Below are positions 12,622 through 63,324 of a stretch of DNA of 63,324 nt, piece by piece. The position numbers and the translations under genes were made by a program. The stretch comes from Octopus bimaculoides. Taxonomy: Eukaryota. The notes beneath the pieces were generated by a model. It ran no database searches and was not told the origin of the DNA. It saw nothing but the letters and a program-made list of their open reading frames with translations. How positions within the stretch are numbered: position 1 is the stretch's first letter; every line of letters starts with the position of its first letter. The stretch is from assembly GCF_001194135.2 (NCBI RefSeq), contig NC_069004.1, forward strand, positions 17,137,711 through 17,201,034, in the 5' to 3' direction.

Positions 12622-12665
<44 letters not shown>

Positions 12666-14269
12666 TACATATGTGTGTGTGTGTGCGTATATATGTATGT
12701 ATGTACATAAATGTATATATCTTTGTGGTTGTCCCCTACCATAACTGGTGTTGGTTTGTTTATGCCCCCATAATTTAGCAGTTCAGCATGAGAGAAAAGA
12801 AATAAGTCCTGGGGTTGATTCTTTTCATTAAAACTCTTTAAAGCGGTGCCCCAACATGGCCACACTCCAATGACTGAGACAAGTAAACAATAAAAGATAA
12901 TCACCAGNNNNNNNNNNTCACCAGCATCATCTATATCTTTTTTCCATGCTGGCATGGATTGGACTGGTTGTTATGAACCAAGTCATTTCTTATTTAAAGT
13001 TAATGACTTCCAAGATAGGTCAGAGAATATATCTCACTTCTATGTTCCATTTTTGGCATATTTTCCAATGGTAGGGTGGCTTTCTCATCACCTACCAATT
13101 TGTAATGGATGCAGTTTATCAGGGTACCATCTTCAAGAATTTTAGTCTTTCATGTTGATTCCTGCACATATCTCGCTCTTGTAGTTATTTCATCAATTTC
13201 TATTTATTGAATCACTAAGTTATGCTTCAAGCATAAAGGGATGCAACTTGACACTGGTTTGCACAGTAAACACACACACACACTCACACACACTCACACA
13301 CACACACACTCACACACACACACACACACACATACACACACACACACACACACACATTGTGTAGCAAGATAAGGAATTATATGATTCACCTCATAGTTGT
13401 TTGGTTTGACCACCACATAAACATACACTGCACCGCAAAAGAAACGCGAGTCATTTGGCCACTCTGCGGCTACTTTAGAAGACAATTATCCATGGAACTT
13501 GACTGGANNNNNNNNNNNNNNNNNNNNNNNNNNNNNNNNNNNNNNNNNNNNNNNNNNNNNNNNNNNNNNNNNNNNNNNNNNNNNNNNNNNNNNNNNNNNN
13601 NNNNNNNNNNNNNNNNNNNNNNNNNNNNNNNNNNNNNNNNNNNNNNNNNNNNNNNNNNNNNNNNNNNNNNNNNNNNNNNNNNNNNNNNNNNNNNNNNNNN
13701 NNNNNNNNNNNNNNNNNNNNNNNNNNNNNNNNNNNNNNNNNNNNNNNNNNNNNNNNNNNNNNNNNNNNNNNNNNNNNNNNNNNNNNNNNNNNNNNNNNNN
13801 NNNNNNNNNNNNNNNNNNNNNNNNNNNNNNNNNNNNNNNNNNNNNNNNNNNNNNNNNNNNNNNNNNNNNNNNNNNNNNNNNNNNNNNNNNNNNNNNNNNN
13901 NNNNNNNNNNNNNNNNNNNNNNNNNNNNNNNNNNNNNNNNNNNNNNNNNNNNNNNNNNNNNNNNNNNNNNNNNNNNNNNNNNNNNNNNNNNNNNNNNNNN
14001 NNNNNNNNNNNNNNNNNNNNNNNNNNNNNNNNNNNNNNNNNNNNNNNNNNNNNNNNNNNNNNNNNNNNNNNNNNNNNNNNNNNNNNNNNNNNNNNNNNNN
14101 NNNNNNNNNNNNNNNNNNNNNNNNNNNNNNNNNNNNNNNNNNNNNNNNNNNNNNNNNNNACAATGGACACGAGTTAGAATACGAACAATAATAAATGAAT
14201 GAAGAATGAATACAGAGTGCATGTGTTTATTTGGCAAAAAAAATAATAATAACCGTCCCAAAATACAAC

Positions 14270-14305
<36 letters not shown>

Positions 14306-32800: not shown

Positions 32801-35514
32801 ATTTATTTTGTGGGTGGATCAGCTTTGGGTTCAGAAGTCAAATAATTTTTGCAACACTTGTATTGTGTGTGTATGTGTGTGTGGTTACAGGCATGGCTGT
32901 AGACACAGTCATGTCTTTGTGGTAAGAAGTTTGCTCCCCAACCACATGGTTCTGGGTTCAGTCCCATTTAGGCTAAATGTTGCTTCTAATTTAGCTGAAA
33001 AATTCTTTTAGGCTTTAGATAAACATATCTCTAAATCTAGCCCATATCATAAAATTTTTAATTGGCACACAGTTAAACTAGCATACTCTACAATACCCAA
33101 CATTGCTGAATATATAGGTCATTCGGAGTTTTCTCTCTTTAGTCAAGATCCAGATTATCTTTGCAATTTTGGCTGGTTATTCTCGATATTGCTCCAATCT
33201 GGCCAGACCCAAGGAAAAACTAAGCATTAGATTCCTTGGAAGAAAGCAGCAAATGTATACAAAAGACAAGGACAGAAAAAAACGAACAATGTTACATAAA
33301 TACAGTAATACAAATACAGTAAGAATAATAACAGGACAAACCAACAGATGTCAGGTCATCCCATAAGTTCTGTCCGAATTTTGAATAAAGAAAGCAAGTG
33401 ATCAAATGTTATATTTAATTGAAATTTAATCATCAATGTACTTTCCCTGATTATCTATGACTTCCTTCCATCTATTTACAAGCTTTTTAATCCCATCAAT
33501 GTAAAACTCTTTTGGTTTCAAAGCGAAGAACTCTGAAATGTCNNNNNNNNNNNNNNNNNNNNNNNNNNNNNNNNNNNNNNNNNNNNNNNNNNNNNNNNNN
33601 NNNNNNNNNNNNNNNNNNNNNNNNNNNNNNNNNNNNNNNNNNNNNNNNNNNNNNNNNNNNNNNNNNNNNNNNNNNNNNNNNNNNNNNNNNNNNNNNNNNN
33701 NNNNNNNNNNNNNNNNNNNNNNNNNNNNNNNNNNNNNNNNNNNNNNNNNNNNNNNNNNNNNNNNNNNNNNNNNNNNNNNNNNNNNNNNNNNNNNNNNNNN
33801 NNNNNNNNNNNNNNNNNNNNNNNNNNNNNNNNNNNNNNNNNNNNNNNNNNNNNNNNNNNNNNNNNNNNNNNNNNNNNNNNNNNNNNNNNNNNNNNNNNNN
33901 NNNNNNNNNNNNNNNNNNNNNNNNNNNNNNNNNNNNNNNNNNNNNNNNNNNNNNNNNNNNNNNNNNNNNNNNNNNNNNNNNNNNNNNNNNNNNNNNNNNN
34001 NNNNNNNNNNNNNNNNNNNNNNNNNNNNNNNNNNNNNNNNNNNNNNNNNNNNNNNNNNNNNNNNNNNNNNNNNNNNNNNNNNNNNNNNNNNNNNNNNNNN
34101 NNNNNNNNNNNNNNNNNNNNNNNNNNNNNNNNNNNNNNNNNNNNNNNNNNNNNNNNNNNNNNNNNNNNNNNNNNNNNNNNNNNNNNNNNNNNNNNNNNNN
34201 NNNNNNNNNNNNNNNNNNNNNNNNNNNNNNNNNNNNNNNNNNNNNNNNNNNNNNNNNNNNNNNNNNNNNNNNNNNNNNNNNNNNNNNNNNNNNNNNNNNN
34301 NNNNNNNNNNNNNNNNNNNNNNNNNNNNNNNNNNNNNNNNNNNNNNNNNNNNNNNNNNNNNNNNNNNNNNNNNNNNNNNNNNCTGCAAGTTCTTTCATTC
34401 AAGCATTCTTTCCCATAAACTGAGTGTATGTTTTGAGTCGCTTCGGCTGCAGAGTTTCCATTTTTTGTACTCATAAAGCATTATGTGCCTTAAATGCTCT
34501 TTGGATACTTCCATGTTAGAAAGGGTTTTAATCAAAGAAATTTTAATTCTATTATTCTGTAAAATAATATTTAATTAGTTTAAATGTAAACAAATGCATA
34601 AAAATCATTTTTAATTACATTAGACATTCTAAAATACTATTAAATTTCATTCAATTTTAAAAAAGGTAAAATCGGACAGAACTTATAGGATGACCTGATA
34701 TATATAGATATATATAGGTACAGGCATGGTTGTGTGGTAAAAAGCTTGCTTCCCAATCATATGGTTCTGGTTTCTGTCCCACTGCATAGCACCCTAGACA
34801 AGTATCTTTTACTATAACCTTGGGTAGACCAAAGCCTTGTGAGTGGATTTGGTTGATGGAAACTGAAAGAAGCCCATCATATATATATATATATGTCTAT
34901 ATGTGTGTATTGGTGTTTATCCCCACCACCATCGCTTGACTATGGATGTTGATGTGTTTATATCCCCGTAACTTAGCGGTTCAGCAAAAGGGACCGATAG
35001 AATAAGTACTAGGCTTACAAAGAATAAATCCTGGGGTCAATTTCTTTGACTAAAGGCACTGCTCCAGCATGTCAAATGACTGAAACAAGTAAAAGAATAA
35101 AAGAGTAAAAATAAAAGAATATATATATATATAAAGGATAAAGACCCCCTTCGGTCATGAATGACCATGGGATTGCACCTAGAAAATTACCCTCAGGCAA
35201 AGTTGTTTATGAAGGACCAGCAGTTGCCCATGCACACCAGCCTCCCTTCTCTACACCTCTGATGTTATCCAAGGGAAAGGCAAACGCTGAAACACCTTGG
35301 CACCAGTGATATTGCAACCATTTCTACAGCTGAAAGAACTGGAGCAATGTGAAATGAAGTATCTTCCTCAAGAACATACCACACAGCTTTGTCTTAGAAT
35401 CGAACTCACTACCTCCTGATTATGAGCCCAGTGCTCTAACCACTGAGCCATGCACCTTCACATATCTGTGTGTGTGTGTGTGTGTGTATATATCTGTATT
35501 TATCTATCTATCTA

Positions 35515-35575
<61 letters not shown>

Positions 35576-38500
35576 CTGTATTAATAAATGTATTAAAATT
35601 ATCTTCCTTTGAGAGAACTCAAATCCATGTGGTTGAGAATTAAACTCCTTACCACATAGCCATTCTTACTCATCGTAAAAATTTAGTAACAAACTACCAT
35701 GAAAATATCTCCTATATAACATCTTTTTATAGAATAGAATCACACTCATCAAATCCCTGTACAGAATTATAATTCTCTAATTGTTGCATCCCTTATCAGA
35801 ATGACAATTCTCCGTTAATAACATGTTCTTATCCTTTTACAGATTGCTTGATCCAATTGAAGAAGAAGTAATGTATGAGATTTCCAAGTTTTATAAGGCA
35901 AATGTAAGAATTCATCAAATTTACTTCTTCACTCCAACATGAATTTCATTGAATTTAGGCTCAGACAAGGCTCTGTGGTAAGAAGTTTGCTTCCCAACCA
36001 TGCAGTCTTGAGTTCAGTTCCATTTTGCACTATCACTATCACAAGAAGGTTGACAGAGAATATAGTCTTTGTGTGTGTGGAAAATGTGCAGGAACAATAA
36101 ACACTAAAAATGTGCAGACAATAGACTCCCTCAAATGCTCGGAGGGATCATTAGAAGCAGTTGATAGCTTCTATTACCTAAGACTAAGTTAGCAGTGATA
36201 GAGGAAGTTCTGATAGTGTGGTTGCTAGAATAAGAACAGGCTGAGAAAAGTTCAGAGAGTTTCTGCCTTTGTTGGTAATTAAGGGCCTCTCCCTCAGAGT
36301 GAAAGGCAGATTGTATGATGCCTGTGTATGCACAGCTATGTTACATGGCAGTGAAAAATGGGCTTCGACTATAGAGGACTTGTGAAGGCTTGAAAGAAAT
36401 GAAGCTAGCATGCTCAGTTGGATAGTTAATGTCAGTGTGTATGCACGATGGAGTGTAAATGATTTAAGAGGAAAACTGAGTACAAGAGACATCAGATGTC
36501 GTGTGCAAGAGAGAAGACTGCACTGGTTTGGTTATGCGATGCGTATGAATGAGGACAGCTGTGTAAAGAAGTGCTAAAATGTAATTGTGGAATGTACCTG
36601 TAGAAGGGGTAGTACACCCAAGAAGACATGGGACAAAGTGGTGAGAAAGGATCTTCAGACACTGGGCTTCACTGAGAAAATGAAAAGGGACTGGGAGTTG
36701 TGGCAATTTGCTGTACTTGATAAGACACGTTAAGATAAGAAAACCAAAAATGTGGCACCCTAGTCGTAATACCAACTTGAACTTCTAACTTGTCTCTTGA
36801 GGTCTCTGGGTGAGACTTGGAACCGACTTGTACAAATACAAAGCAAAAGCCAAACATATACAGGGGTTGGACAAAATAATGGAAGCACCTTCAAATTTAT
36901 TTTAATATTGGGTAGGATCACCTTTGGCAGTAATTACAGCTTGAATTCTACAAGGTATGGACTTGTACAAAGTTTGAATTGTTTCCAAAGGAATTTTTGT
37001 CCATTCTTCAGCTAAAACAGTCTCCAGTTCTTGTAGTGATGATGAGGGAGGATATCGACTCCTTACTTGTTTTTCTAAAATGCACCATAAATGTTCAATA
37101 ATATTGAGATCTGGGGACTATGGAGGCAAGATAAGATGTTCAACTTCACTAGAATGTTCCTTGTGCCATTCAGTAATAACTTTAGCTGTGTGAATTGGTG
37201 TGTTATCATCCTGAAAGATTGCATTTCCCTCCGGAAACAGTTCTGCAACCATAGGAATTTGATCAGATAAAATGCTTAGACAGTCTTGACTATTAATTCT
37301 GCCATGAAGGGAAATCATTGGACTGGTGGATTTCCAAGATATAGCCCACCAGATCATCACAGATCCTCCTCCATATTTAACAGTTGGAAGAAGGCAGTCT
37401 GGGTCAAATGCTTCTTTTGGCTATCTCCACACATATACTCGGCCAGTGGTCAGAAATAAGGTAATGGATGACTTGTCTGAGAAAATAACTTTCTTCCACT
37501 ACTCTAGGGACCATTTCTGTAGGTTTTTACTCCACTCTAAATGCTTTGCAACATTTGTTTTTGAAAGTAGTGGTTTTCTCATTGCAGCCCTCCTGTGAAA
37601 TCTGGCTTTGTCAGCTTCCGGCGAACAGATTTTGTGGAAACTGGGTTCTCGAGGTGGTCATTAAGCTCTGCAGTAATTTTGGGAGCTGTACTTTTGTGAT
37701 CCTTTCTAACAATTCGTGTAAGAGTTTGATGGTCCCTATCTGAAAGTTTTGGTTTCCTCCTGGAGTTTTGTTTCGACAAGGAGGTTTTTCCCTCTTTCTC
37801 AAAGGTTGTCATTACTTTCGAGACAGTACTTCTTGATACACCAAACATTTCGGCTGTTTTCATTATGCTAGCGCCTGCCACACAAACACCAACAATTTGA
37901 CCACTTTGAAAGTCCGATAGATCTGTCATTTTAATAAATTTTAATTATCTTTTTCTGATGATATCTGAAAAGAAACAGCAATTTTATCAAAACATATTAA
38001 GCAACACTAATAATAAATCAAGAAACATAAAAATAAACAAGCTTTTGACGGTTTTATAGATATTTCAAAATTATGATACTATGATGCTAGGTGTTTCCAT
38101 TATTTTGTCCAACCCCTGTATATATATACCCAGGCTTATTCCCCATTTTATTTTTTAGGAGTGGGTAGCCACAACAAGACACCCATCAAGCATTCCGTTC
38201 CTTTTCCCAGCTCAAAGCCAAACAGATGATGATGACGATTTGTTTTTCTTTCTAATTTTGGCACAAGGCCAGCAATTTTAGGGTTAGTTGGGTAAAGGAG
38301 TTAGTTGATTACATTGACTCCCCGCTGATATTTGATTGGTACTTTATTGACCTCAAAAGAAGATGAAAAGTAAAGTTGACGTTGGTAGTATTTGAATTCA
38401 GAAAGTAAAGAACTTGAAGAAATGCCATAAAGCATTTTGTCCAACAGGCTAAGGATTCTGACATCTGATTTAGGCACAAGGCCAGCAATTTCTTTGGGAA

Positions 38501-40877: not shown

Positions 40878-43800
40878 TATATATAAATATCCGAGTTTGT
40901 ATGATTGTGTATAGAATAATATATTAATCATTGAAATTCCAACTTAGTCTGATTTTCACGTTTTATTATTTAATAAAACATGAAAATCAGACTAAGTTAG
41001 AATTTCATTGATTAATATATATATATATGTACGATGGGCTTCTTTCAGTTTCCTATTTCTTTATTGCCCACAAGGGGCTAAACATAGAGGGGACAAACAA
41101 GGACAGACAAAGGGATTAAGTCGATTACATCAACTCCAGTGTGTAACTGGTACTTAATTTATCGACCCCGAAAGGATGAAAGGCAAAGTCGACCTCGGCG
41201 GAATTTGAACTCAGAACGTAACAGCAGACGAAATATCGCTAGGCATTTCGCCCGACGTGCTAATGTTTCTGCCAGCTCGCCACCTTCTTTCAGTTTCCGT
41301 CTAACAGATCCACTCACAAGGCTTTGGTCAGCCCACGACTATAATAGAAGACACTTGCCCCAGGTGAAACTGGAACCACACAGCCATGTCCATATATATT
41401 TTTTACAAAATGAAATAGGAAGTTCTGATGCTGATGTTGATATTAATTAAAGGCATAAGTAATGTAAAAGAAATAAAAAGTTAGATACAATAATACTTTG
41501 GCAAGTCTTAGTATTGATTTGAGTATTGTTTGCATATACTAGCTTCATTTTTCTCTAGTCTGTGTGTGTTGATAATGTTTGATATTGCTTCATTATTTTT
41601 AGGGAGGTAAAGAGTCGGTGCCAGAATCTAAAAGCAGCAAAGTCTGGAAGCCATGAAAATAATAAAAATACTTTCAGGTAAGAATTTCAAATTTTAGTGC
41701 TGGAATTATGTATATAAATCATATAAATATGTGAACTGACTCCAAACTGTCTATGATGTTTGATATAAACATGTGGACTAATACATTAATGTATGACAGA
41801 TCGTATAAACATGTTGCATTTCTGAAATATAAATTTAGACTGACATAATATAGCTGATATATCATATAAACATGTGTGGTAATGTAGTGTTGTGTTGCAT
41901 ATATCATAAAAACATGTGAACTGACATATAAACATGTGGGCTGATTTACAGAACAGTGTTTATGTCACCATACACAAAATTAATGGAACACTATCTGAAT
42001 TGTTTACTTTTTAACTTCCTGTTTTAAAGAAAGTCTGTATCATAGAATAAATTTGTTGTACGACACAAGCTTCCATCGAAATTTCATGTTAGTTTATGTT
42101 ACAAACACCTGATTAATAATGTCGATTATTTTAGTTAATTATTCAATATTTTAAAAAGTAATTGAAACAAAGGCAGTATATTTCAACAGAAATATGGTAA
42201 CAAAAGGATTAAGTTTAAAAATTAAAGTTTCTATTGGTTCCAATCCACTACTGTATACTCATCCAGAAAAAAAACACACACCTGATGACATTCATAGAAC
42301 AGACCAACTAAAGCATGATATCAGTATAAATATTCAAGCATTTTATATTGCTAAAGATGAGGTTAATAATCAGAAAAAATATTTTATTATTTTAACTCTT
42401 TGATAGGGAAATAGCTAAAACTAAAAATTGCCTAAAGATCCATAATGATTTTAGCATACATGTTTGTATGATTACAGCTTATATAGTAGTATGTCAGTCC
42501 ACATGCTGGAACATTTTATTTTGTTCCCCTGTAATAAAAGGTTTCCTGAATAAGACCTCTTCTTAAGAATTCATTATCATTCTTATATATTTTTTTCTAA
42601 ATTCACAGGCTGGTGCTTTAAACCAAAGTTTTACAGAATCTATATACTCATTCTTCACTTCAGCTTTATTATTATTCTTATTTTAGTGTCTTTTGTCTGT
42701 AATTTCCTATCCTGTTTAGTCCATGGACTAAACAGGACAGGAGACACATAGGATGGAGAGCCACCCAAGAGGTCACAGGATGGGTGATGAAAGATTTCAG
42801 ACAAAGTACACTAAAACACGAATAACAAGAGCACACAGAGAGTGCAAACCTCTGCCAAGGCAACACCAATGTCCTCTCAACAATTAGCCAGAAATGATTT
42901 TTAAAATGAGAATATCTAAAATCATCTCGACTGCTCTCACAAACGAGAATACTAAAAATGAACCTGACTGCTCTCAAAAATTAAGTAAAAAAACAGGAAA
43001 AATAATCCAGAATCCTTGTCCAGTGCCGGATCGATCGCAAAATCTGATCAGTTTGTACTAGTTCCATCCGAATCCATCCAGCGGTTCTTGTGATATCTTG
43101 TCCATGGACAAACAAACAAACGAACAAACACAACTGAAAACAATACCTTCACCTTAGTGAAGGCGAAGGTAATAATAAAGCTGAAGTGGTTAATCGGCAG
43201 AGAAAAAAGACCATCCTGAAATATAGCAATACTTGAAGACTGTCATGTATTTAATGAAAGAAAAGCTATTCCCCATGTATACAAGTATGTGTATGTGTGT
43301 GTGTGTGCATGCATGTATTACAGTTAAAAAGTAAACAGTTCAGATAGTGTTCCATTAATTTTGTGTATGGTGACATAAACACTGTTCTGTAAATCAGCCC
43401 ACATGTTTATATGTCAGTAACACTAGTGTGTCAGTTCACATGTTTTATGATATATGCTACATGACACTGCATTACCAAACGTGTTTATATGATATATCAG
43501 CTATACTGTGTTTAAATATTTATATATCAGAAACACAGCATGTTTAAATGGTGACAATGATATATATATATATATGTGTGTGTGTGAGAAAGTTGGTGTG
43601 TGAAAGCACGTGGTTGGATGCATAAAATTCAAAATCAAATCTGACTTTACTTGTACCTCAGAAAACCTTATTTATGTCATAAAATGCTCGGGCTGCCACA
43701 AAAACTACATAGGGTCCACAGGATTATCGCTCACACACGGATGCACTCTGCATCGACAGCAGATTGCATTCCCAGAATACAGAATGATACCCCTTAGTGA

Positions 43801-46800
43801 ACATATTGAAAAATGTGCAAAANNNNNNNNNNNNNNNNNNNNNNNNNNNNNNNNNNNNNNNNNNNNNNNNNNNNNNNNNNNNNNNNNNNNNNNNNNNNNN
43901 NNNNNNNNNNNNNNNNNNNNNNNNNNNNNNNNNNNNNNNNNNNNNNNNNNNNNNNNNNNNNNNNNNNNNNNNNNNNNNNNNNNNNNNNNNNNNNNNNNNN
44001 NNNNNNNNNNNNNNNNNNNNNNNNNNNNNNNNNNNNNNNNNNNNNNNNNNNNNNNNNNNNNNNNNNNNNNNNNNNNNNNNNNNNNNNNNNNNNNNNNNNN
44101 NNNNNNNNNNNNNNNNNNNNNNNNNNNNNNNNNNNNNNNNNNNNNNNNNNNNNNNNNNNNNNNNNNNNNNNNNNNNNNNNNNNNNNNNNNNNNNNNNNNN
44201 NNNNNNNNNNNNNNNNNNNNNNNNNNNNNNNNNNNNNNNNNNNNNNNNNNNNNNNNNNNNNNNNNNNNNNNNNNNNNNNNNNNNNNNNNNNNNNNNNNNN
44301 NNNNNNNNNNNNNNNNNNNNNNNNNNNNNNNNNNNNNNNNNNNNNNNNNNNNNNNNNNNNNNNNNNNNNNNNNNNNNNNNNNNNNNNNNNNNNNNNNNNN
44401 NNNNNNNNNNNNNNNNNNNNNNNNNNNNNNNNNNNNNNNNNNNNNNNNNNNNNNNNNNNNNNNNNNNNNNNNNNNNNNNNNNNNNNNNNNNNNNNNNAGT
44501 ATATATTTAAAACATTATGTTAGAAAAATGTTATAAAATTTTGAGTATAGAAACATTGTATTTGGAGAAAAAGCCAGTTTCATATTGACTTTCCTGCTAA
44601 TGGACTGATTATATCCACAAGGAAGTGGCTCAGTGGATGACATGTTGAACCTCTACAGCTCACTATAGCTCTTAATGGAATATCATCCTTGTGAATCTTA
44701 GGGAGACCGTACATGTGTGGTAGTTTACTGTAGTGTTGAGTCAGTTGTCTGTACTTCATTGGTGTGAAGTGATCCTTGTTCTTGATCAAGATCTGTGACA
44801 ACTTCCTCTCTATTTTCAAAGTTGGGTCTTTCTTTTCTTTGCTGTAGCTACCATCACTTATAAGACTTGCCAATTTTTCGGAGTAGTCAGACTTGTTCAT
44901 CACCACTGTAGCATTTCCCTTGTCCGCCAGAAGTATTACGATGGAATTGTCACTCTGTTGTCTTTTGATAGCGAACATTTCTTCCTTGGTGATGTTTGGT
45001 TTGGGAAGTTTCACTTTTTCTAGTACTTGTCTCACTTTCCACCTTAGTTCATCTCCCTGGGCTTTTGGTATCTTTATGGCCATCTCTTCAGTAGGGGCTA
45101 TTATGTCCAAGTATGAATGCGCTTGATGGTTGTTGCAAAGTTGAGACCTTTGTTCAGTACTGCTTCTTCAGAACTTTCTAGGTGTCAGCTACTTACATTA
45201 ATTACTGCTTCAAAGGTGGGTGACAGATTTCAGTCTTCATTCTCTGACTTTTGAGTTTCATAAACTTCTTAATCTGGCGTGTCTTCACCACTTGAAATTC
45301 TTTCATGTATGACTTTTCTAGAAGACTACTTTCTCTGTTAACCTTCCTGTAATACCACTGCACCTCTTATGTATCCATAACCTGCACTGGGTATACTCAT
45401 TGCTGACCCTCACCTTACTGACAGCATCCCTGTACATGGCTTGTACAACCCTCACCAACCACTCATCTACCCCTAGCTTCCATATTGCCCACCAGATAAG
45501 TCTCCATGTCAACAAAAGCCAAATACAGAGGTTTATTATTAGTTAGATGTTTCTCCTAAAGTTGCTTCACCAGGAAGATAGCATCAGTAGTGCTTCTTCC
45601 TGGCATAGAACCAAACTGCATCTCATCTAGATTAATTCTCTTCCTAATTAATTGAGCTATGACCCTTTCTGTAACTTTCATCACCTAGTCCAGCAATTTG
45701 ATACCTCTGTAATTATTTCTGACTAAGACGTCACCTTTACATTTGTAGCAGTTGACTATAATGCTGTTACATCAGTCGTTGAGAATGATTCCCTTCTGGT
45801 CAACCTGATTAATAGTACAGGTGACTAAGCCACGTCCTACTCTGCCAGATATTTTAAGCATCTCAGTAGTGATTCCTGATGAGCCAGGGACTTTCCTTAT
45901 CTTCATATTCTTAATCTACCAAGCTACTGTTGATCTGGATAGTTGATCCTTCTGTTGGGTCTACATTAAGCAGACACTCCTTCTCTCATGCATTCTCTAC
46001 ATTTAGCAGTGGCATTTCCAAGCCTCTTTCTTTGCAGAATCACGAACTGCAAGTGAACCATCATCCATGCACACACACACAGCAATCCAAAACACCTCAA
46101 ACCTCTCTGGTCCTTGTGCTACAGAACATTGGCAAACTTCTTCCTTTCTGCTTCTCCTGTGGCTAAGTATACCTGTCTCCTAGCTTCCCTTCTAGCTACC
46201 TGATTTAGTTTTCTGCTACCACCACCCTTCCAGCCCTGTTTCTTTGCTTTAATGGCATTGTCATCTACTCTGTTCCATCACCATGTCACCCTAGTCTGGT
46301 TGGGACTTTGCACCAGCCACAAATTTGGGTTGTGGCTCTCAGTAAGTTGTCTCTTAGGAACCTCCAGTTGTCTTCTGTGTTACATGTCTATAAATCCTCT
46401 TCCTTCTTGTGAAATGCTTCAATTAGGACATCTCCAAATCTCTGACTATTCAAAGAATCCTTAAGCTTCGAAATCCTTCTTTTCCAGACTGCTCTACTTG
46501 GAATCCTTTTAACCTGCAGTCTGAAATCACTATTGACTAACCTATGCTAAGAGGTACATTCTTTACTAGGAAAGGTCTGTGCATTTATGAGCAACCATGC
46601 ATCTCGCTTTCTGGTGAGAATGTGGTCAATCTGGCTAACATGGACACCAGATTGATAGGTTATCAGGTGACTGGCAGGCTTTCCAAATCTGGTGTTGAAG
46701 ATCATAAGGTTTTATTTTGTATCACAGAGCTCCAGTAGCCTTGTTCCCTCCTCATTGCTGGAACTAACTTCATGGCCACCATGCACAATGTGGAAGACAC

Positions 46801-57200: not shown

Positions 57201-60107
57201 TGTCCAGCTTTTTGTGTTCTGAGTTCTTGGTTGGTAAAGTTACTCCTTCATCTGGTCCTTGGGTGCTTCAAGTAGAGTCTAATGCAAGCGTTCAGCCCAT
57301 GTCTCCAATTTGGGGATAACATGCTCCTACCAGTCTCACAGAACCACCAGAATAACAGGGATACAATTGTTACCCTCCCCCACCTAACTATAGCTGTAAA
57401 AAAAATATTAAAAAAAAAAGACTCAAACAGGTACAGGTGTGACTGTGGTAAGAAGTTTGCATTCTAGCCATGCAGTCTTGGATTCAGTCCCACTGCATAG
57501 CACCCTGGGTAAGTATCTTCTACTATAGCCCTGAACTGACCAAAGTGACCCAAACCTTGTGAGTAGATTTGGTGGGCAAAAGCTGAAAGAAGCTGGTTTT
57601 TTGTGTGTGTATGTATGCATATACTATGTTTGTGTTTGTCCTTCATCACCAATGTTGGTTTCATTTTGTCCCCATAGCTTAGCAGTTTGGCAAAAGGGAC
57701 TGATAGCATAAGTACCAGGTTTAAAAAAGTAAGTGCTGGGGTTGATTCATTCAAATAAAAATTTGGCAAGGCAGTGCCTTGTATATATAGATCTGCTGAG
57801 CGAGACATGTCGCACGATTTGCAAACAACAGATTGGACTGTGCAGATAGAGAGTGGTAGCCAAGAGATTGGAAAAGGCAACTGAGAAGGGGTCTCTACAG
57901 TGATAGGAAGACAAATTAGTAAAATAATTTGGGCCAAGATGGCTGAGAATGGTGCGATCAAGAAAGAATTGGAAACACATTGTGACCAATAATGTATAAG
58001 AACTTCTGATAGTTTAGTCAATACAGGTGAAAAATCCTTTAATCTTTTACTTGTTTCAATCCCTTCGCTGAAACTGTTCGCCTTGTGCCTAAATTTGAAA
58101 CCAGCATTATACAGACTTCAGTATTATATATACATCAATATTATACATGCATCAGTATTATATATCTGTCAACTACTAACTGGAATAAATTAAAACTCAT
58201 TAAAATTAAATATTTCCAGAAAGGAAATCAAAGAGGTCAGTGGTGGGAGGAGGGGTTTAAATTGAAATTCATTATTTCAGTCATTCGTCTATGGCCATGC
58301 TGGGGCACTGCTTTGAAAGGTTTAGCTCAACAAATCAACCCCAGGAATACTTACTTTTAAGCCTGATACTTATTCAAGTGGTTTCGTTTTGCCAAACTAC
58401 TAGATTACAGAGAGGTAAACAAACCAACTTTGGTTGTCAAGCAGTGATGGGACACAAACTCAAAGGTACACAGTTGTTTACATATCCAAGGTGAACATAA
58501 AATCTGGAGACAGGTGAAAATGCTTATTTTCAATAATTCTATTCAACAACATCAATGAATAACACTTTCAACAATGGGTTTATCCAAGACACTGTGTGTT
58601 TTATCTTTCATCTTTTTACTTGTTTCAGTCATTAGACTGTGGCCAAGCTGGGGCACCACCTTAAAGAATGTTTAGTCGAATGAACTGACCCCAGAACTTA
58701 TTCTCTTCTTTAAGCTTGATACTTTTATTTGTCACTTTTGCCAATTTGCTAAGTTACAGGAAACACACCAGCACTGGTTGTCAAGTAGTGGTGGGGGACA
58801 AACACACACACATACATATGTATGTATATACAACATGCTTCTTTCAGTGGTGTCTGTCTACCAAATCCACTCACAAGGCTTTAGTCAGCTCAAGACAATT
58901 ACCCAAAGTTTCATGAAGTGGGACTGAATTAGGAACCATGTGATTGGGAATCAAGCTTGTTACCATACAGTCACATCCTAGAAGAGAGGAAAGTTCTAGA
59001 AAGTCAGGAGGCATGAGATGAATATATTTATTTCACCAGTTGATATCCATAAGATTATGATCTCCATTACACTCCTCTGTATTGGTTTACTCTGTGGTTT
59101 ATAACCTGGTCCACTGGAGAAGCTTTTTTGTGATTACCACTGGATTAGATAAATCCATATATTGCACCTTAAATTTTGATTACACACACACACAAGCACA
59201 AAACAAGGTGGAAAAAATAGTACTCAAATACCAAAGGTAGAGTAATATACTTTTTGTTAAAGCTGCAGAAAGTTTTCATCACAACTGTCCAACGAATAGG
59301 CTCTCACAGCCTCTTCTACAGCAACTACAATGGCCTCTTCACCTCTGAATTTGCCATATATGTTCCCACCTCTAATTACACAATCTTTAAAATGAAGGAC
59401 ATGTATAATGTGACCATTTGTACATCTGTCTCGGAAAAGGTTTTGAGGCCATGAATAGGATACCTTTCATAATATGCCACTTGTGTGGAATGTATTTAGT
59501 CAGTGCTGATGCAATGTTGTACAATGAAGTACTCCTTGATCAATTGTTATATAGAATCTGTTGATTCACTATAAAGTGCTACAACTCCATCCAATGTTGT
59601 AAGGTACTGCTTGAAATAATATTGTGAAGTCCTCGACAATCCCATCTTAGGAAGAATTTCCTTTAATGTGGAGTTCTGAGATATATTTTAATCCAGTAGA
59701 ATATGCATGTGATACGTGTATCAATCTGGTATTGTAAAATAATCCTTTTAGTTTGGCATTGTGTGGATATTAGCATTCCATAATCCAGTTGTGAGACATG
59801 ATTTTCACTGATTCTTCTTCTCCAGCTTCTGTCTTCTGAATTTTTGGTATTTTGGTGACAAATACTGTGTTAAACTCACCAAAATATACATGGATAACTC
59901 TATTATGGACAAGAGCATGTTTGCTAAACAATCTTTTTCACATTATTTTCTAAAAATATAATCAAACATTTTATGAATATGAACTGAAAATTTCATACAA
60001 AATCAGTGAATCCTTACAATAAAAAAGGTGAGAGAAGAAGGGTCAAAGCAGGGATAAGAAAGAGAAAAAAGGCAAGTGAATTTCCAGGACCTCAAAAAAT
60101 TGTTACT

Positions 60108-61115
60108 TTATCTTTCCTTCCCCATTACTGGATCAATAGTGAGTAAACCACATGCAATCAGTTTGTTAATCTTTTTGCGGATTTCTGGATCTTTCATATA
60201 CATTGCCATAGAGTTTGGATTATTTTGCATGTCATAAAGTATTTTGCTTATTTCTGGTTCACTTAGAATCGCTCTCAATTCAGGGTTTCTCTGTATACGT
60301 CTTTGGACAACCTCTGGTGCAGTTGTGTCCAGTCCAGCTTCTTCAGAACTGATCTTGTATCCTTTTAAAGCTTCCTCACAGTTACTGTCAATATCTAAGG
60401 CCTTTTCATATTCTAGATGGGCTTTTGAAAAGGCCCTCATCTTCTGAAATAGCTTGCCCTTGATAAGATAGGCTTGAATGTATGTAGGATCAATCCTAGA
60501 ACAGGATTCTGCATCTTGCAATGATAGTGTATACTCTTGCATCTTCAGGTAGCAGAGAGCTCGGTTGTAATGTCGTCTGACATCGTTAGGACTTCTCTTA
60601 ATTGCCTCAGTATAATGATTGAGAGCGTTGTTGTAATCTTTCTCTTTGAAACACTGGTTTCCCTTTTGATTTTCTTCTTCAGAAATATCAAAATTGATGT
60701 AAGCATTTTTACGTTGTTCTTCTAGGTCCAGTTCCATCTTCTGAGCAATTTTTATCACTGCAGGATTTCTGTCTTCTATAATGGAATAGTCATAAAACTT
60801 CAGGGAATTCTCTAAATCGTTCAGTTTTTCATATGCTTTAGCCAAACGGTAATATGTTTTTGCTAAAGTTTTTCTTTCAACTTTATTTTTGGGGTCCAGC
60901 TTCAAAGCATTTGTACAGAGTTCTACACATTCCTGGTATTTTCCTTGATCAAGAAACACTGCTGCCTTGTTATTAATTACTGTTATATTATTAGGATCAT
61001 ACTCCAAAGCAATCTCGTAATGTTTCAGGGCTTTGTTAAAATTCTTTGCCTTGTATTCATCATTACCTTTAATTTTTTCTTCTTCACACAATCTGCTCTG
61101 TTCTTTGTTATCCAT
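60108..61115 (-). CDS. STIP1: Intronless STIP1/HOP-like co-chaperone, TPR2A-TPR2B-DP2 only (335 aa); probable retrogene
   Basis: Uninterrupted ORF aligning without gaps over TPR2A-TPR2B to human STIP1 from about residue 216 (EKxxGNDxYK, AYIN, YTEAIKR, DP2-like tail). acaATGg start with an in-frame TGA 2 codons upstream. Paralogue rather than orthologue. Confidence 0.9.
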   Translation of the reverse strand: MDNKEQSRLCEEEKIKGNDEYKAKNFNKALKHYEIALEYDPNNITVINNKAAVFLDQGKYQECVELCTNALKLDPKNKVERKTLAKTYYRLAKAYEKLNDLENSLKFYDYSIIEDRNPAVIKIAQKMELDLEEQRKNAYINFDISEEENQKGNQCFKEKDYNNALNHYTEAIKRSPNDVRRHYNRALCYLKMQEYTLSLQDAESCSRIDPTYIQAYLIKGKLFQKMRAFSKAHLEYEKALDIDSNCEEALKGYKISSEEAGLDTTAPEVVQRRIQRNPELRAILSEPEISKILYDMQNNPNSMAMYMKDPEIRKKINKLIACGLLTIDPVMGKER

Positions 61116-62886
61116 TGTTCAGAGATGAAAGGTTTTCCTCCAAATTAAACAAACTCAAACGAATATAAGAGTCATTGGAAGGTTATTCCAATAAAAATTT
61201 ACAACTGAAGTCAGTCTGTGAAGAAACATATAATATATTTATCACTTTGAAGACATTAAGTAAAATATTTTGCTTTTAACAGATGAAGATGACTGTTAGT
61301 GAGTTGCGTTGAATTTTTGGTGTGAAAAACACCTCAATAACTCCAGCAGAATAATTTAACAACCAATCAACAAAATTATTTCATTCACTAGTTGGTTTAT
61401 GATATAGCTAGATAGCTAGATAATATAGCTAATATAGCTAATATAGCTAATATAGCTAGATAGCATTAATGACTGCAAACTGCAGCCTGCAGCAGACCGG
61501 GGGATCAATGAAACACACAATATGTTGCTATGACAAGGTTAAGTCCACGTAATGAGATTTCTCTAGATTGATGTTGAGTAAAAGAAGGAAATAGGGTTGA
61601 GTGTGGGCAGATTAGTGAAATCCACAATTAGGCTAATAGCATTTAATATGCCAGGGATTTAACTTAATTACAATACTTCAATAGTATACACAATTCAGTA
61701 TTGTACATTATTCACTAATATACATACTTCAATATTATACACACTTCAAAGGCAGCGAGCTGATGGAATTGTTAGTATACTGGGTAAAATGCTCAATGGC
61801 GTTTCATCTTAGTTCAAATTTCACCAAAGTCAACTTTGCCTTTCATCCTTTTGAGGTCAACAATAGAGTACCAGTTGAGCACTGGGGTGAATACCACTCT
61901 TGGATACCACTCAGTAACTGCACAGACTCACCTGTTGTGTGCGAATCTTGTGACATGTCTGGCCCAGCAGAATTATATATAGTCTGGTGTAGTCTTGGGC
62001 CTGGCCAGCTCATGTCAAACTGTCCTACCCATGCCAGCATGAAAAACATACATTAAACGATGGTGATGATGATACACACACACACACACACACCATATTC
62101 ACACATCTTAATATATCTTTTATCATTTACTTGTTTCAATCATTGGACTGCAGCCATGTTGGGGTCACGCTCTGAAGGGTTTTAGTTGAATGACTCGACC
62201 CCCAGTACTATTTTTTAAAGCCTGGTACTTATTCTCTTGGTCTCTTTTGCCAAACGACTAAGCTGTGGGGATGTAAATTGCTGGTCCTGTGCCAAAATTT
62301 GAAGCCAATATTATACACACTGCAGTATTATACATACTTCAATAGTATACATACTTTGCCTGGGTTTATCCAAGACACTGTGTGTTTTATCTTTCATCTT
62401 TTTACTTGTTTCAGTCATTAGACTGTGGCCAAGCTGGGGCACCACCTTAAAGAATGTTTAGTCGAATGAACTGACCCCAGTATTTATTTTTCTTTAAGCC
62501 TGGTACTTATTCTACTGGTCTCTTTTGCTGAACTGCTAAGTTACAGGAACATGAACATACCAACACTGGTTATCAAGTGGTGGGTGGGGTGGGGTTTGGT
62601 GAGGGGGTCAAACACACAGATGTATACATACGTCACGAGGGGGAGGGGGAGCGCTAAGCGGTGATAAGTGAAATTGCAATGTTATTATCAGTCCAAATAT
62701 ACTTGATGCACATTTGAACTGGGGAACAAGCTACTTACTGTCTCTTTGTCACAGACAGTATATCTACCTTGACTGTGAGATGTTAGCATTTCACAGTAGT
62801 TACCTCCTCATTGGTCACAGACACTAAGCAGACAACACCGAGCTGAATTAAGAGATTATCTTTCTTATGCTTTTCCAGTCACTGTA

Positions 62887-62971
62887 CGATGACTGTCAGC
62901 GCTACACGATGACTGTCAGCGCTACACGATGACTGTCAGCGCTACACGATGACTGTCAGCGCTACACGATG
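62887..62971. repeat. Perfect 20-bp tandem repeat (cgatgactgtcagcgctaca) x4.25
   Basis: read directly. Confidence 0.95.
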
Positions 62972-63324
62972 GCTCACTGTAAGTAAATTATGGAAGGGGA
63001 GCACTAAGCAGTGGTAAGTGGAATTGCTATGTTATTATCAGTCTGAATAAGCATGATGCATGTTCAAACTGGGGAACAAGCTACTCACTGTGTTTTGTCA
63101 TGGATAATATATCTTGCTTGTTGACAAATGAGGTGTATATACCTAAATCATCTCGCAGTGCCATCTACCTAGACTGTGAGATGTTAACATTTTGGAGTAT
63201 AGTCTGGTGTAGTCTTGGGCCTGTCCAGCTCATGTCAAACTGTCCTACCCATGCCAGCATGAAAAACATACATTAAACGATGGTGATGATGATACACACA
63301 CACACACACACCATATTCACACAT

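What the first reader, a model, noticed from the sequence alone, without database searches (positions are those of the whole stretch)
60108..61115. Intronless half-HOP: Hsp90 clamp intact, Hsp70 (TPR2B) clamp selectively erased
Seen: an intact 335-aa single-exon ORF with TPR2A-TPR2B-DP2 and no TPR1/DP1. It aligns gap-free to human STIP1 at an offset of 215. All five TPR2A carboxylate-clamp residues are kept (K14/N18/N49/K86/R90 = K229/N233/N264/K301/R305). In TPR2B all three basic residues are replaced (N149, Q214, I218 = K364, K429, R433) while both Asn (N153, N184) remain. The inter-TPR linker (AYIN; YTEAIKR) is conserved. Established: TPR2A binds the Hsp90 MEEVD, TPR1 and TPR2B bind the Hsp70 EEVD, and TPR2A-TPR2B suffices to inhibit Hsp90 ATPase. 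Inference: this retrogene has lost both Hsp70 sites and could be an Hsp90-only modulator or a competitive antagonist of HOP, i.e. a lineage-specific co-chaperone. Random decay would not be expected to hit only these positions while leaving the frame open.
Basis: partly seen in the sequence, partly recalled or inferred. Interest (0 to 1): 0.82.

Follow-up and report, generated by a model that had tools for sequence, protein, structure and literature searches.

The report
Octopus intronless mini-HOP co-chaperone gene
Octopuses and the paper nautilus share a conserved, single-exon, shortened copy of the Hsp70/Hsp90-organising co-chaperone HOP that keeps its Hsp90-tail binding site but has lost the charged residues of its second tail-binding groove, so it probably acts on Hsp90 without holding Hsp70 in the usual way.

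Summary
Window 60108-61115 (-) is an intact 335-aa ORF in Octopus bimaculoides. It aligns gap-free to human STIP1 222-542 (TPR2A-TPR2B-DP2). The TPR2A carboxylate clamp is intact. The three basic clamp residues of TPR2B are replaced: K364N, K429Q, R433I.

It is a real gene, not decay. 335-aa single-exon orthologues sit at the same locus, next to an IBTK-like gene, in O. sinensis, O. vulgaris, an unnamed octopod and Argonauta hians. There are no indels, dN/dS is about 0.15, and the clamp substitutions are shared by all. Among 332 other HOPs examined, none lacks all three basic residues.

A gastropod STIP1 has at least 7 introns in this region, which supports origin by retroposition.

- The change is not selective. 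About 30% of canonically invariant positions differ in every domain, including the DP2-Hsp90 interface.
- The TPR1-less architecture has precedents in C. elegans, mites and Perkinsus.

The canonical octopus STIP1 could not be retrieved, and there is no expression or binding evidence. The gene is already annotated as "STIP1-like" but appears unstudied. I rate it a new variant of a known kind, of moderate interest.

The parts
60108..61115 (-). Complete single-exon CDS (335 codons plus TAA) of the octopod mini-HOP (STIP1-like).
   Evidence: ORF listed. It is identical to the protein called at O. bimaculoides CM046624.1. Orthologues were found. dN/dS is about 0.15.
60705..61115 (-). TPR2A domain (aa 1-137). 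The carboxylate clamp K14/N18/N49/K86/R90 is intact, which predicts an Hsp90 MEEVD docking site.
   Evidence: Alignment to 7kw7_E and 1elr. Clamp columns checked. The AF2 model matches 2nc9 and 3fwv at TM 0.88-0.92.
60330..60704 (-). Linker (AYIN) plus TPR2B domain (aa 138-262). Clamp Asn N153/N184 are kept. The basic residues are replaced by N149, Q214 and I218. The groove also carries Y183, L187 and L190.
   Evidence: This domain has the lowest dN/dS of the three (0.11-0.13). The model matches C. elegans TPR2B (4gco) at TM 0.92.
60111..60329 (-). DP2 domain and C-terminal tail (aa 263-335).
   Evidence: Pfam PF17830, E 9.1e-19. Four of five client-pocket residues are kept. Three of five Hsp90-contact residues are changed.
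61119..61121 (-). In-frame TGA two codons upstream of the start ATG. It closes the frame to any upstream coding exon.
   Evidence: Sequence. The TGA is conserved in O. bimaculoides, O. sinensis, O. vulgaris and the SRR11869391 octopod.
61170..61290 (-). Conserved non-coding block at -55 to -175 from the ATG. It is probably 5'UTR or core promoter. It contains a splice-acceptor-like tttcttcacag at about -111 to -101. This is inference only.
   Evidence: Sliding identity is 97-100% between O. bimaculoides and O. sinensis and 80-92% against the third octopod, compared with 35-90% further upstream. Sequence.
59471..60064 (-). Conserved block downstream of the stop codon, a probable 3'UTR. Two ATTAAA hexamers lie at 59687-59692 and 59662-59667.
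   Evidence: 92-100% identity between O. bimaculoides and O. sinensis, against about 86-88% in neutral flanks. Hexamers found.

Best explanation
This is a functional, octopod-conserved, intronless paralogue of the co-chaperone HOP/STIP1, a 'mini-HOP'.

Origin (inferred): it most likely arose by retroposition of a 5'-truncated STIP1 mRNA before Octopus and Argonauta diverged. It acquired a start codon in the linker just before TPR2A. It then diverged quickly and has since been held under purifying selection.

Mechanism (inferred from family knowledge):
- TPR2A, with a complete two-carboxylate clamp, docks on the C-terminal MEEVD of Hsp90.
- The rigid TPR2A-TPR2B unit sits on the Hsp90 middle domain, as in Sti1/Hop, and restrains the ATPase cycle.
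- DP2 retains most of its client-cradling pocket.
- The protein has no TPR1. Its TPR2B groove has lost all three positive charges and gained bulkier hydrophobic residues, so it cannot capture the Hsp70 EEVD tail in the canonical way.
- It would therefore act on Hsp90 without bridging Hsp70. It could be an Hsp90 brake or adaptor, or a competitor of canonical HOP and other TPR co-chaperones for the MEEVD tail.

Shown here: gene integrity, conservation, synteny, selection, fold and residue states.
Inferred: retroposition, Hsp90 binding, loss of Hsp70-tail binding and physiological role.
For: Identity and architecture:
- Gap-free alignment to human STIP1 222-542, E 2.4e-93.
- Pfam TPR repeats plus STI1-HOP_DP.
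- AF2 model with mean pLDDT 94. Its best PDB matches are Hop in the Hsp90-Hsp70-Hop-GR complex (7kw7_E) and yeast Sti1 TPR2A-TPR2B (3uq3_A; TMt 0.88, rmsd 2.6 A over 256 columns).

Conservation:
- 335-aa single-exon orthologues in O. sinensis, O. vulgaris, a third octopod (Logan SRR11869391) and Argonauta hians.
- In the four genome assemblies, all lie 4-9 kb from a convergent Ank-RCC1-BTB gene. The third octopod is a 2.7-kb contig that does not reach that gene.

Selection:
- NG86 dN/dS is 0.15 for three Octopus-clade pairs. The bootstrap interval is 0.09-0.25.
- TPR2B has the lowest ratio, 0.11-0.13.
- Octopus versus Argonauta has pS 0.8 (saturated) and dN 0.17, with no indel.
- The CDS is more conserved than its flanks.

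Clamp:
- The TPR2A clamp is kept (K/R, N, N, K, R).
- TPR2B is N, N, N, Q, I/V in all six sequences, against near-invariant K, N, N, K, R in 180 canonical HOPs.
- No other HOP among 152 diverse representatives lacks all three basic residues.
- Other TPR1-less HOPs keep the clamp.

Retroposition:
- Haliotis STIP1 spans 31.4 kb with at least 7 introns between aa 234 and 528.
- The octopod ORF starts about 9 codons upstream of the first of these intron positions and reads through all of them.

Background from the literature:
- TPR2A-TPR2B suffices for Hsp90 ATPase inhibition. TPR2A-TPR2B-DP2 is the minimal functional module (PMC8629791).
- In the loading complex, TPR2A holds the Hsp90 EEVD and TPR2B holds the Hsp70 EEVD (PMC9138868).
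Against: - No expression data could be obtained. The only Logan contig is collinear with genomic flanks and may be DNA.
- The canonical octopus STIP1 was not found in three protein searches. The 'paralogue with a parent' part is therefore unproven.
- No poly(A) remnant was found. Target-site duplications were not looked for. Both are expected to be erased at this age.
- About 30% of canonically invariant positions are changed in every domain. These include TPR2A pocket residues F270L/I and E271D and DP2-Hsp90 contacts D501E, A503E and L506K. Hsp90 engagement may therefore also differ from canonical HOP.
- HOP also contacts the Hsp70 NBD outside the EEVD groove, so some Hsp70 association cannot be excluded.
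- TPR2B binds both chaperone tails weakly in canonical HOP. Calling it 'the Hsp70 clamp' is a simplification.
Confidence: 0.6

Rival explanations
1. Neofunctionalised adaptor. The TPR2B groove is not dead. It has been rebuilt to bind a new, non-acidic and more hydrophobic ligand. The protein would then tether an octopod-specific partner or client to Hsp90 through TPR2A.
For: - TPR2B is the most constrained domain, with dN/dS 0.11-0.13 and zero non-synonymous differences between O. bimaculoides and O. sinensis.
- The groove changes are coordinated and fixed in all six sequences: K364N, S398Y/H, A402L/V, T405L, K429Q, R433I/V.
- The two clamp Asn are retained.
Against: - No candidate ligand is known.
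- Constraint on TPR2B could equally reflect its structural role, or its contact with the Hsp90 middle domain (PMC8629791).
- Bulky groove residues could simply fill the groove.
Confidence: 0.2
2. Sole HOP of octopods. The canonical STIP1 was lost and this truncated gene is the only HOP, as in C. elegans. It would then not be a modulator acting alongside a full-length HOP.
For: - No named cephalopod canonical STIP1 appeared in any of three searches. Chiton, gastropod, bivalve, brachiopod, annelid and nemertean proteins did appear.
- O. vulgaris annotators named this protein plainly 'stress-induced-phosphoprotein 1'.
Against: - Absence from the lists is therefore weak evidence.
- HOP is nearly universal in eukaryotes.
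- The very long branch (about 42% identity to every canonical HOP, against 50-60% among phyla) fits a released duplicate better than a sole orthologue.
Confidence: 0.12
3. Last exon of a longer, mis-annotated gene. Upstream exons beyond the window would supply TPR1/DP1.
For: - Only 2.2 kb lies upstream within the window.
- A splice-acceptor-like motif lies at about -100.
- In Argonauta the frame is open for 50 codons upstream of the ATG.
Against: - An in-frame TGA two codons before the ATG is conserved in four Octopus-clade taxa.
- The ATG has a good Kozak context and is conserved in both lineages.
- No TPR1/DP1-like coding sequence lies within 10 kb upstream in four genomes.
- Four independent annotations call a 335-aa single-exon product.
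- The open frame upstream in Argonauta is (TC)n low-complexity sequence.
Confidence: 0.04
4. Processed pseudogene whose frame is open by chance.
For: - It is intronless and 5'-truncated relative to HOP.
- Many invariant HOP residues are changed.
- There is no expression evidence.
Against: - 335 codons are intact, with no indel, in five lineages whose synonymous sites are saturated (pS 0.8).
- dN/dS is 0.15, with an upper bootstrap bound of 0.25.
- The CDS is more conserved than its flanks.
- The protein is predicted to fold confidently, with pLDDT 94.
Confidence: 0.02

Closest known systems
Canonical HOP/STIP1/Sti1 (human STIP1, PDB 7KW7 chain E and 1ELR; yeast Sti1 TPR2A-TPR2B, PDB 3UQ3)
   Same: - Collinear, gap-free TPR2A-linker-TPR2B-DP2.
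- Complete TPR2A two-carboxylate clamp.
- Same predicted rigid TPR2A-TPR2B arrangement (3uq3 TMt 0.88).
- DP2 Pfam domain present and client pocket mostly kept.
   Different: - No TPR1 and no DP1.
- The three basic residues of the TPR2B clamp are replaced and the groove is made more hydrophobic.
- Three of five DP2-Hsp90 contact residues are changed.
- Only about 42% identical to any canonical HOP.
- The CDS is intronless, whereas a gastropod STIP1 has at least 12 coding exons over 31 kb.
C. elegans STI-1 / CeHop (non-canonical HOP lacking TPR1 and DP1; PDB 4GCN, 4GCO)
   Same: A natural TPR2A-TPR2B-DP2-only HOP of about 320-335 aa. It shows that this module alone can be a working co-chaperone (PMC8629791).
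   Different: - CeHop keeps the full TPR2B clamp (K, N, N, K, R). It binds Hsc70 or Hsp90 competitively.
- It is the worm's only HOP (from my own knowledge).
- The octopod protein has lost the TPR2B basic residues. Whether it coexists with a canonical HOP is unknown.
Other short HOPs found here: Dermatophagoides (P0042, 325 aa), Perkinsus (P0129, 335 aa), Fonticula alba (P0020, 339 aa), and unnamed P0017 and P0150
   Same: They have the same truncated TPR2A-TPR2B-DP2 architecture. The architecture has therefore arisen repeatedly.
   Different: All keep basic residues at the three TPR2B clamp positions. None is closely related to the octopod protein (29-39% identity).
Laboratory TPR clamp point mutants of Hop/Sti1 (single Lys/Arg/Asn-to-Ala changes in TPR1, TPR2A or TPR2B)
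   Same: Removing one clamp residue abolishes EEVD-peptide binding in the mutated domain. This comes from established knowledge and the mutagenesis cited in PMC7524759. The octopod TPR2B resembles a natural triple mutant.
   Different: The octopod changes are natural. They are fixed across a divergence deep enough to saturate synonymous sites, come with further groove remodelling, and are under purifying selection.

Membership tests
HOP/STI1 co-chaperone family | TPR2A domain with a two-carboxylate clamp (K229, N233, N264, K301, R305) | tested here: met
   The residues are K/R14, N18, N49, K86 and R90 in all six octopod sequences.
HOP/STI1 co-chaperone family | TPR2B domain directly following TPR2A through a rigid linker helix | tested here: met
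   The alignment is gap-free and includes AYIN. The AF2 model superposes on yeast TPR2A-TPR2B (3uq3) at TMt 0.88, rmsd 2.6 A. This rests on a prediction, not an experimental structure.
HOP/STI1 co-chaperone family | TPR2B two-carboxylate clamp (K364, N368, N399, K429, R433) | tested here: not met
   The residues are N149, N153, N184, Q214 and I/V218. All three basic residues are replaced in all six sequences. This combination is unique among 332 other HOPs examined.
HOP/STI1 co-chaperone family | C-terminal DP2 (STI1/HOP DP) domain | tested here: met
   Pfam PF17830, residues 268-320, E 9.1e-19, 67.6 bits against a cut-off of 29.1.
HOP/STI1 co-chaperone family | N-terminal TPR1-DP1 module (present in most HOPs, absent in C. 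elegans) | tested here: not met
   The protein starts 13 residues before the first clamp Lys. There is an in-frame stop upstream. No TPR1/DP1 coding sequence lies in the window or within 10 kb upstream in four genomes.
HOP/STI1 co-chaperone family | Physical binding of Hsp90 MEEVD and Hsp70 EEVD; inhibition of Hsp90 ATPase | not testable with these tools
   This needs recombinant protein and peptide-binding or ATPase assays.
Processed retrogene (retrocopy of a multi-exon parent) | CDS lacks all introns that the parent gene has in the same region | tested here: inconclusive
   The octopod CDS is one uninterrupted exon in five lineages. Haliotis STIP1 has at least 7 introns in the homologous region, and the octopod ORF crosses the first intron position. 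The octopus parent gene itself was not retrieved.
Processed retrogene (retrocopy of a multi-exon parent) | Poly(A) remnant and target-site duplications at the insertion | tested here: not met
   No A-rich tract lies within 2 kb of the stop codon in the Octopus clade. The 128-nt direct repeats flanking the gene are copies of a dispersed repeat, not target-site duplications. Short target-site duplications were not searched for directly. Erasure is expected at this age, so this does not argue strongly against retroposition.
C. elegans-type non-canonical HOP | TPR2A-TPR2B-DP2 only, with both TPR grooves able to bind EEVD tails, and the sole HOP of the genome | tested here: not met
   The architecture matches. 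However, the TPR2B clamp is lost, whereas C. elegans has K, N, N, K, R. Whether it is the sole HOP was not determined.

The most novel reading that the evidence does not exclude
Octopods have evolved a private Hsp90 adaptor. It keeps HOP's Hsp90-docking TPR2A and client-cradling DP2. Its TPR2B groove has been converted from an acidic-tail (EEVD) clamp into a strongly constrained, uncharged and hydrophobic pocket that recruits a new, non-Hsp70 partner to Hsp90. This would be a natural re-wiring of the Hsp70-Hsp90 relay. It would be more striking still if octopods turn out to lack a canonical HOP.
Probability: 0.2. Interest if true: 0.7.

Novelty: new variant of a known kind. Interest (0 to 1): 0.45.

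Why it matters
HOP is the textbook bridge that hands clients from Hsp70 to Hsp90. Which of its three EEVD-binding grooves matters, and when, is still debated.

This protein is a natural HOP module that has been held by purifying selection across an octopod divergence deep enough to saturate synonymous sites. It keeps the Hsp90 groove but lacks TPR1 and lacks every positive charge of the TPR2B groove. That makes it an evolutionary 'separation-of-function mutant'.

It could show what TPR2A-TPR2B-DP2 does on Hsp90 when Hsp70-tail capture is removed. It might also reveal a new ligand for a re-purposed TPR groove.

It adds a lineage-specific co-chaperone to the list of cephalopod gene novelties. 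It is also a clean example of an old retrogene kept by selection.

The practical impact is modest until expression and binding are shown.

Tried and rejected
1. Finding the parent octopus STIP1.
- None listed a named cephalopod canonical HOP.
- Listings are capped at 120 hits and the word index is incomplete, so absence cannot be concluded.

2. Exhaustive phmmer against 1.84 billion cluster representatives.
- Only the Argonauta-represented cluster is close, at 541 bits.
- The next hits are canonical HOPs at 297 bits or less.
- No squid or Nautilus mini-HOP was seen. Relatives above 50% identity would be hidden inside that cluster.

3. Unnamed lophotrochozoan-like HOP transcripts as possible cephalopod parents.
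- P0304 was the NJ sister of the half-HOPs in only 25% of bootstraps.
- Its GC3 is 0.11, against 0.33-0.43 for the octopod CDS, so it is not an octopus sequence.
- P0251 and P0381 come from runs SRR24204647 and SRR30276804. Their organisms could not be identified.

4. Literature.
- No paper on cephalopod HOP/STIP1 was found.
- An apparent match to the run accession was a different accession.

5. Expression evidence.
- The Logan contig from SRR11869391 is collinear with genomic flanks. It cannot be told apart from genomic DNA.

6. Phylogenetic placement.
- Half-HOP monophyly was recovered in 300/300 bootstraps.
- The sister group is unresolved among mostly lophotrochozoan taxa, and long-branch effects are likely.

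7. Other scans.
- Rfam and tRNA scans of the window found nothing.
- Upstream similarity in Argonauta seen by tblastn is (TC)n low-complexity sequence, not a coding remnant.
Full report
**1. The observation**

The ORF listing reports one long ORF at window 60108-61115 on the minus strand. It is 335 aa long, starts with ATG and ends with TAA.

phmmer against all PDB chains puts human STIP1 (7kw7_E) first, at E 2.4e-93. Query residues 7-327 align to STIP1 222-542 without a gap, so the offset is 215. Pfam finds multiple TPR repeats and the STI1/HOP DP domain at residues 268-320 (67.6 bits, cut-off 29.1).

I re-derived the clamp mapping in an alignment of 180 canonical metazoan HOPs. The alignment is numbered on a frog STIP1 whose 15 clamp residues carry human numbers.
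- TPR2A: K14, N18, N49, K86, R90 correspond to K229, N233, N264, K301, R305.
- TPR2B: N149, N153, N184, Q214, I218 correspond to K364, N368, N399, K429, R433.

One small slip: HYTEAIKR lies in TPR2B, not in the linker.

**2. Source and orthologues**

The protein is encoded on Octopus bimaculoides chromosome record CM046624.1 (GCA_001194135.2). Its 90% cluster holds three more sequences:
- O. vulgaris CAI9740067.1;
- O. sinensis XP_036368749.1 ('stress-induced-phosphoprotein 1-like');
- a Logan contig from run SRR11869391, which represents a third Octopus-clade taxon (93% aa identity).

Argonauta hians has a 335-aa orthologue at 73% identity. It sits on two contigs that share the same context and are probably haplotigs.

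In all four genome annotations the gene range equals the CDS (1008 nt), so the coding sequence is one exon. In each case the neighbour 4-9 kb beyond the 3' end is a convergent Ank-RCC1-BTB (IBTK-like) gene. The locus is therefore orthologous across Octopus and Argonauta.

**3. Gene or relic?**

All six sequences are exactly 335 codons long, with no indel.

Nei-Gojobori dN/dS is 0.15 for O. bimaculoides versus O. sinensis, for O. bimaculoides versus the third octopod, and for O. sinensis versus the third octopod. The codon-bootstrap 95% range is 0.09-0.25. Against Argonauta, synonymous sites are saturated (pS 0.80) while dN is only 0.17.

By domain, TPR2B has the lowest ratio (0.11-0.13). It shows no non-synonymous change between O. 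bimaculoides and O. sinensis.

The CDS is the best-conserved stretch of the locus. AlphaFold2 with an 81-sequence alignment gives mean pLDDT 94. Foldseek returns Hop from the Hsp90-Hsp70-Hop-GR complex and yeast Sti1 TPR2A-TPR2B (TMt 0.88, rmsd 2.6 A) as the best matches.

A pseudogene is excluded for practical purposes.

**4. Is the 335-aa model complete?**

In the four Octopus-clade sequences, an in-frame TGA lies two codons upstream of the ATG (window 61119-61121). The ATG has A at -3 and G at +4 in both lineages.

tBLASTn with six canonical HOPs finds no TPR1/DP1-like coding sequence elsewhere in the 63-kb window, or within 10 kb upstream in four genomes. In Argonauta the frame is open upstream, but through (TC)n low-complexity sequence.

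A conserved non-coding block at -175 to -55 contains an acceptor-like tttcttcacag. A non-coding 5' exon is therefore possible, but upstream coding exons are not. A block about 600 nt long after the stop codon is 92-100% conserved between Octopus species. It carries two ATTAAA hexamers and is a probable 3'UTR.

**5. Origin**

The Haliotis asinina STIP1 gene spans 31.4 kb. tBLASTn maps at least ten coding pieces, with intron positions near aa 234/235, 277, 311, 351, 380-384, 437-440, 472 and 528.

The octopod ORF begins about nine codons upstream of the first of these positions and runs through all of them without interruption. The copy therefore does not begin at an exon boundary, yet it lacks every intron. 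This is the signature of a 5'-truncated processed copy, not a genomic partial duplication.

No poly(A) remnant survives. That is expected after a divergence deep enough to saturate synonymous sites.

The parent octopus gene was not retrieved (see section 9). Retroposition is therefore well supported but not proven.

**6. How unusual is the clamp pattern, and is it 'selective'?**

Among 180 canonical metazoan HOPs:
- position 364 is K in 178;
- position 429 is K or R in all 180;
- position 433 is R in 179.

Among 152 further representatives from across eukaryotes, K364 is replaced by N in about ten lineages and position 429 is acidic in three. None lacks all three basic residues, and position 433 is always K or R.

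Other TPR1-less HOPs all keep a basic TPR2B clamp. These are C. elegans STI-1 (4gco), Dermatophagoides, Perkinsus, Fonticula and two unnamed proteins. The octopod pattern (N, Q, I/V), fixed in all six sequences, is therefore unique in this sample and older than the Octopus-Argonauta split.

Of the positions at least 95% conserved in canonical HOPs, the numbers changed in all half-HOPs are:
- 9 of 30 in TPR2A;
- 11 of 40 in TPR2B;
- 10 of 27 in DP2.

With about 30% of conserved sites changed, keeping 5/5 in one clamp (p about 0.17) or losing at least 3/5 in the other (p about 0.16) is not significant taken alone.

The changed sites include:
- TPR2A pocket residues F270L/I and E271D, and the invariant GRENR loop;
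- further TPR2B groove residues S398Y/H, A402L/V and T405L;
- three of the five DP2 residues that contact Hsp90 in the loading complex, D501E, A503E and L506K. Four of five client-pocket residues are kept (residue list from PMC9138868).

The picture is a burst of divergence over the whole protein. The protein is about 42% identical to every canonical HOP, whereas canonical HOPs of different phyla share 50-60% identity. That burst was followed by strong constraint.

**7. Mechanism**

Established background:
- TPR2A binds the Hsp90 MEEVD through the carboxylate clamp (PMC7524759).
- TPR2A-TPR2B is the minimal segment for full inhibition of the Hsp90 ATPase. TPR2B sits at the Hsp90 middle domain.
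- TPR2A-TPR2B-DP2 is the minimal functional module. C. elegans Hop lacks TPR1 and is functional (PMC8629791).
- In the Hsp90-Hsp70-Hop-GR complex, TPR2A and TPR2B hold the EEVD tails of Hsp90 and Hsp70 respectively, and DP2 cradles the client (PMC9138868).
- TPR2B binds either tail, weakly.

On that basis, the most likely working model is as follows. TPR2A docks on Hsp90. The rigid TPR2A-TPR2B unit and DP2 engage Hsp90 and perhaps a client. There is no canonical capture of the Hsp70 tail, because TPR1 is absent and TPR2B has no positive charge left. The protein would then act as an Hsp70-uncoupled Hsp90 co-chaperone, or as a competitor for the MEEVD tail.

The strong constraint on TPR2B, and the coordinated shift of its groove to uncharged and bulkier residues, leave room for a more novel reading. 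The groove may now bind something else.

All functional steps are inference. Nothing here measures binding or expression.

**8. Comparison with known proteins and novelty**

The protein belongs to the HOP/STI1 family by sequence, domain order and predicted fold. It fails two family features: TPR1-DP1 and the TPR2B clamp.

The first failure has precedents in C. elegans and in other short HOPs found here. The second does not, in this sample.

The gene is already annotated as STIP1 or STIP1-like in three genomes. No paper on cephalopod HOP was found. I therefore class it as a new variant of a known kind, of moderate interest.

**9. Limits**

The canonical octopus STIP1 was not found. Three capped protein searches and the exhaustive representative search returned no named cephalopod canonical HOP and no decapodiform mini-HOP. 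Because of listing caps and clustering, this cannot be read as absence.

It remains open whether the mini-HOP coexists with a full HOP, how old it is beyond the Octopus-Argonauta node, and where it is expressed.

NJ bootstrapping recovers the half-HOP clade in 300/300 replicates. Its sister group is unresolved among mostly lophotrochozoan sequences.

Noticed in passing
window ~1-51244 (+ strand; 3' end near 51244): A large multi-exon gene encodes an Ank-RCC1-BTB (IBTK-like) protein of about 1195 aa. It converges on the mini-HOP gene. The pairing is conserved in O. sinensis, O. vulgaris and Argonauta hians.
   Followed up: partly
window 58575-58702 and 62361-62488; also 57641-57760 versus 62180-62577 (inverted): 128-nt direct repeats, 98% identical, lie on either side of the mini-HOP gene, together with inverted copies. 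They look like young dispersed-repeat (SINE/MITE-like) copies, not insertion-site duplications.
   Followed up: partly
window 61978-62091 and 63198-63311: Two 99%-identical 114-nt copies of another dispersed element. Mechanical ORFs across them share the peptide ...WCSLGP.QLMSNCPTHASMKNIH.
   Followed up: no
window 62886-62971: A perfect minisatellite: the 20-nt unit ACGATGACTGTCAGCGCTAC repeated 4.3 times at 100% identity. It is flanked by 105-nt direct repeats at 62642-62746 and 62992-63096.
   Followed up: no
window 61402-61458; 58102-58162, 61677-61749, 62306-62356: A 9-nt microsatellite (ATATAGCTA, 6 copies) lies about 290 nt upstream of the ATG. Three arrays of a related 17-nt unit (CAGTATTATACATACAT-like) are scattered around the gene.
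   Followed up: no
L002 and L006 (Argonauta hians contigs BAAFZT010000077.1 and BAAFZT010000099.1): Argonauta carries the gene on two contigs with the same neighbours. The copies differ at 5 nucleotides (4 non-synonymous, 1 synonymous). They are probably haplotigs, not a duplication.
   Followed up: partly
proteins P0042 (Dermatophagoides), P0129 (Perkinsus), P0020 (Fonticula), P0017, P0150: TPR1/DP1-less HOPs of 325-347 aa occur in house-dust mites, Perkinsus, Fonticula and unnamed metagenomic eukaryotes. All have a basic TPR2B clamp. The truncated architecture has arisen repeatedly.
   Followed up: partly
proteins P0093, P0105, P0106, P0127 (from the representative search): A few other HOP-like proteins show partial clamp loss. 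P0093, P0105 and P0106 have an acidic residue at the K429 position. P0127 (505 aa, a 29-member Logan cluster) shows N,N,D,K,Y at the TPR2A clamp. These may be real variants or alignment artefacts.
   Followed up: no
window 12001-18000, 33001-36000, 42001-45000: These stretches have markedly low G+C (0.25-0.29, against about 0.37 elsewhere). They presumably lie in introns of the IBTK-like gene.
   Followed up: no
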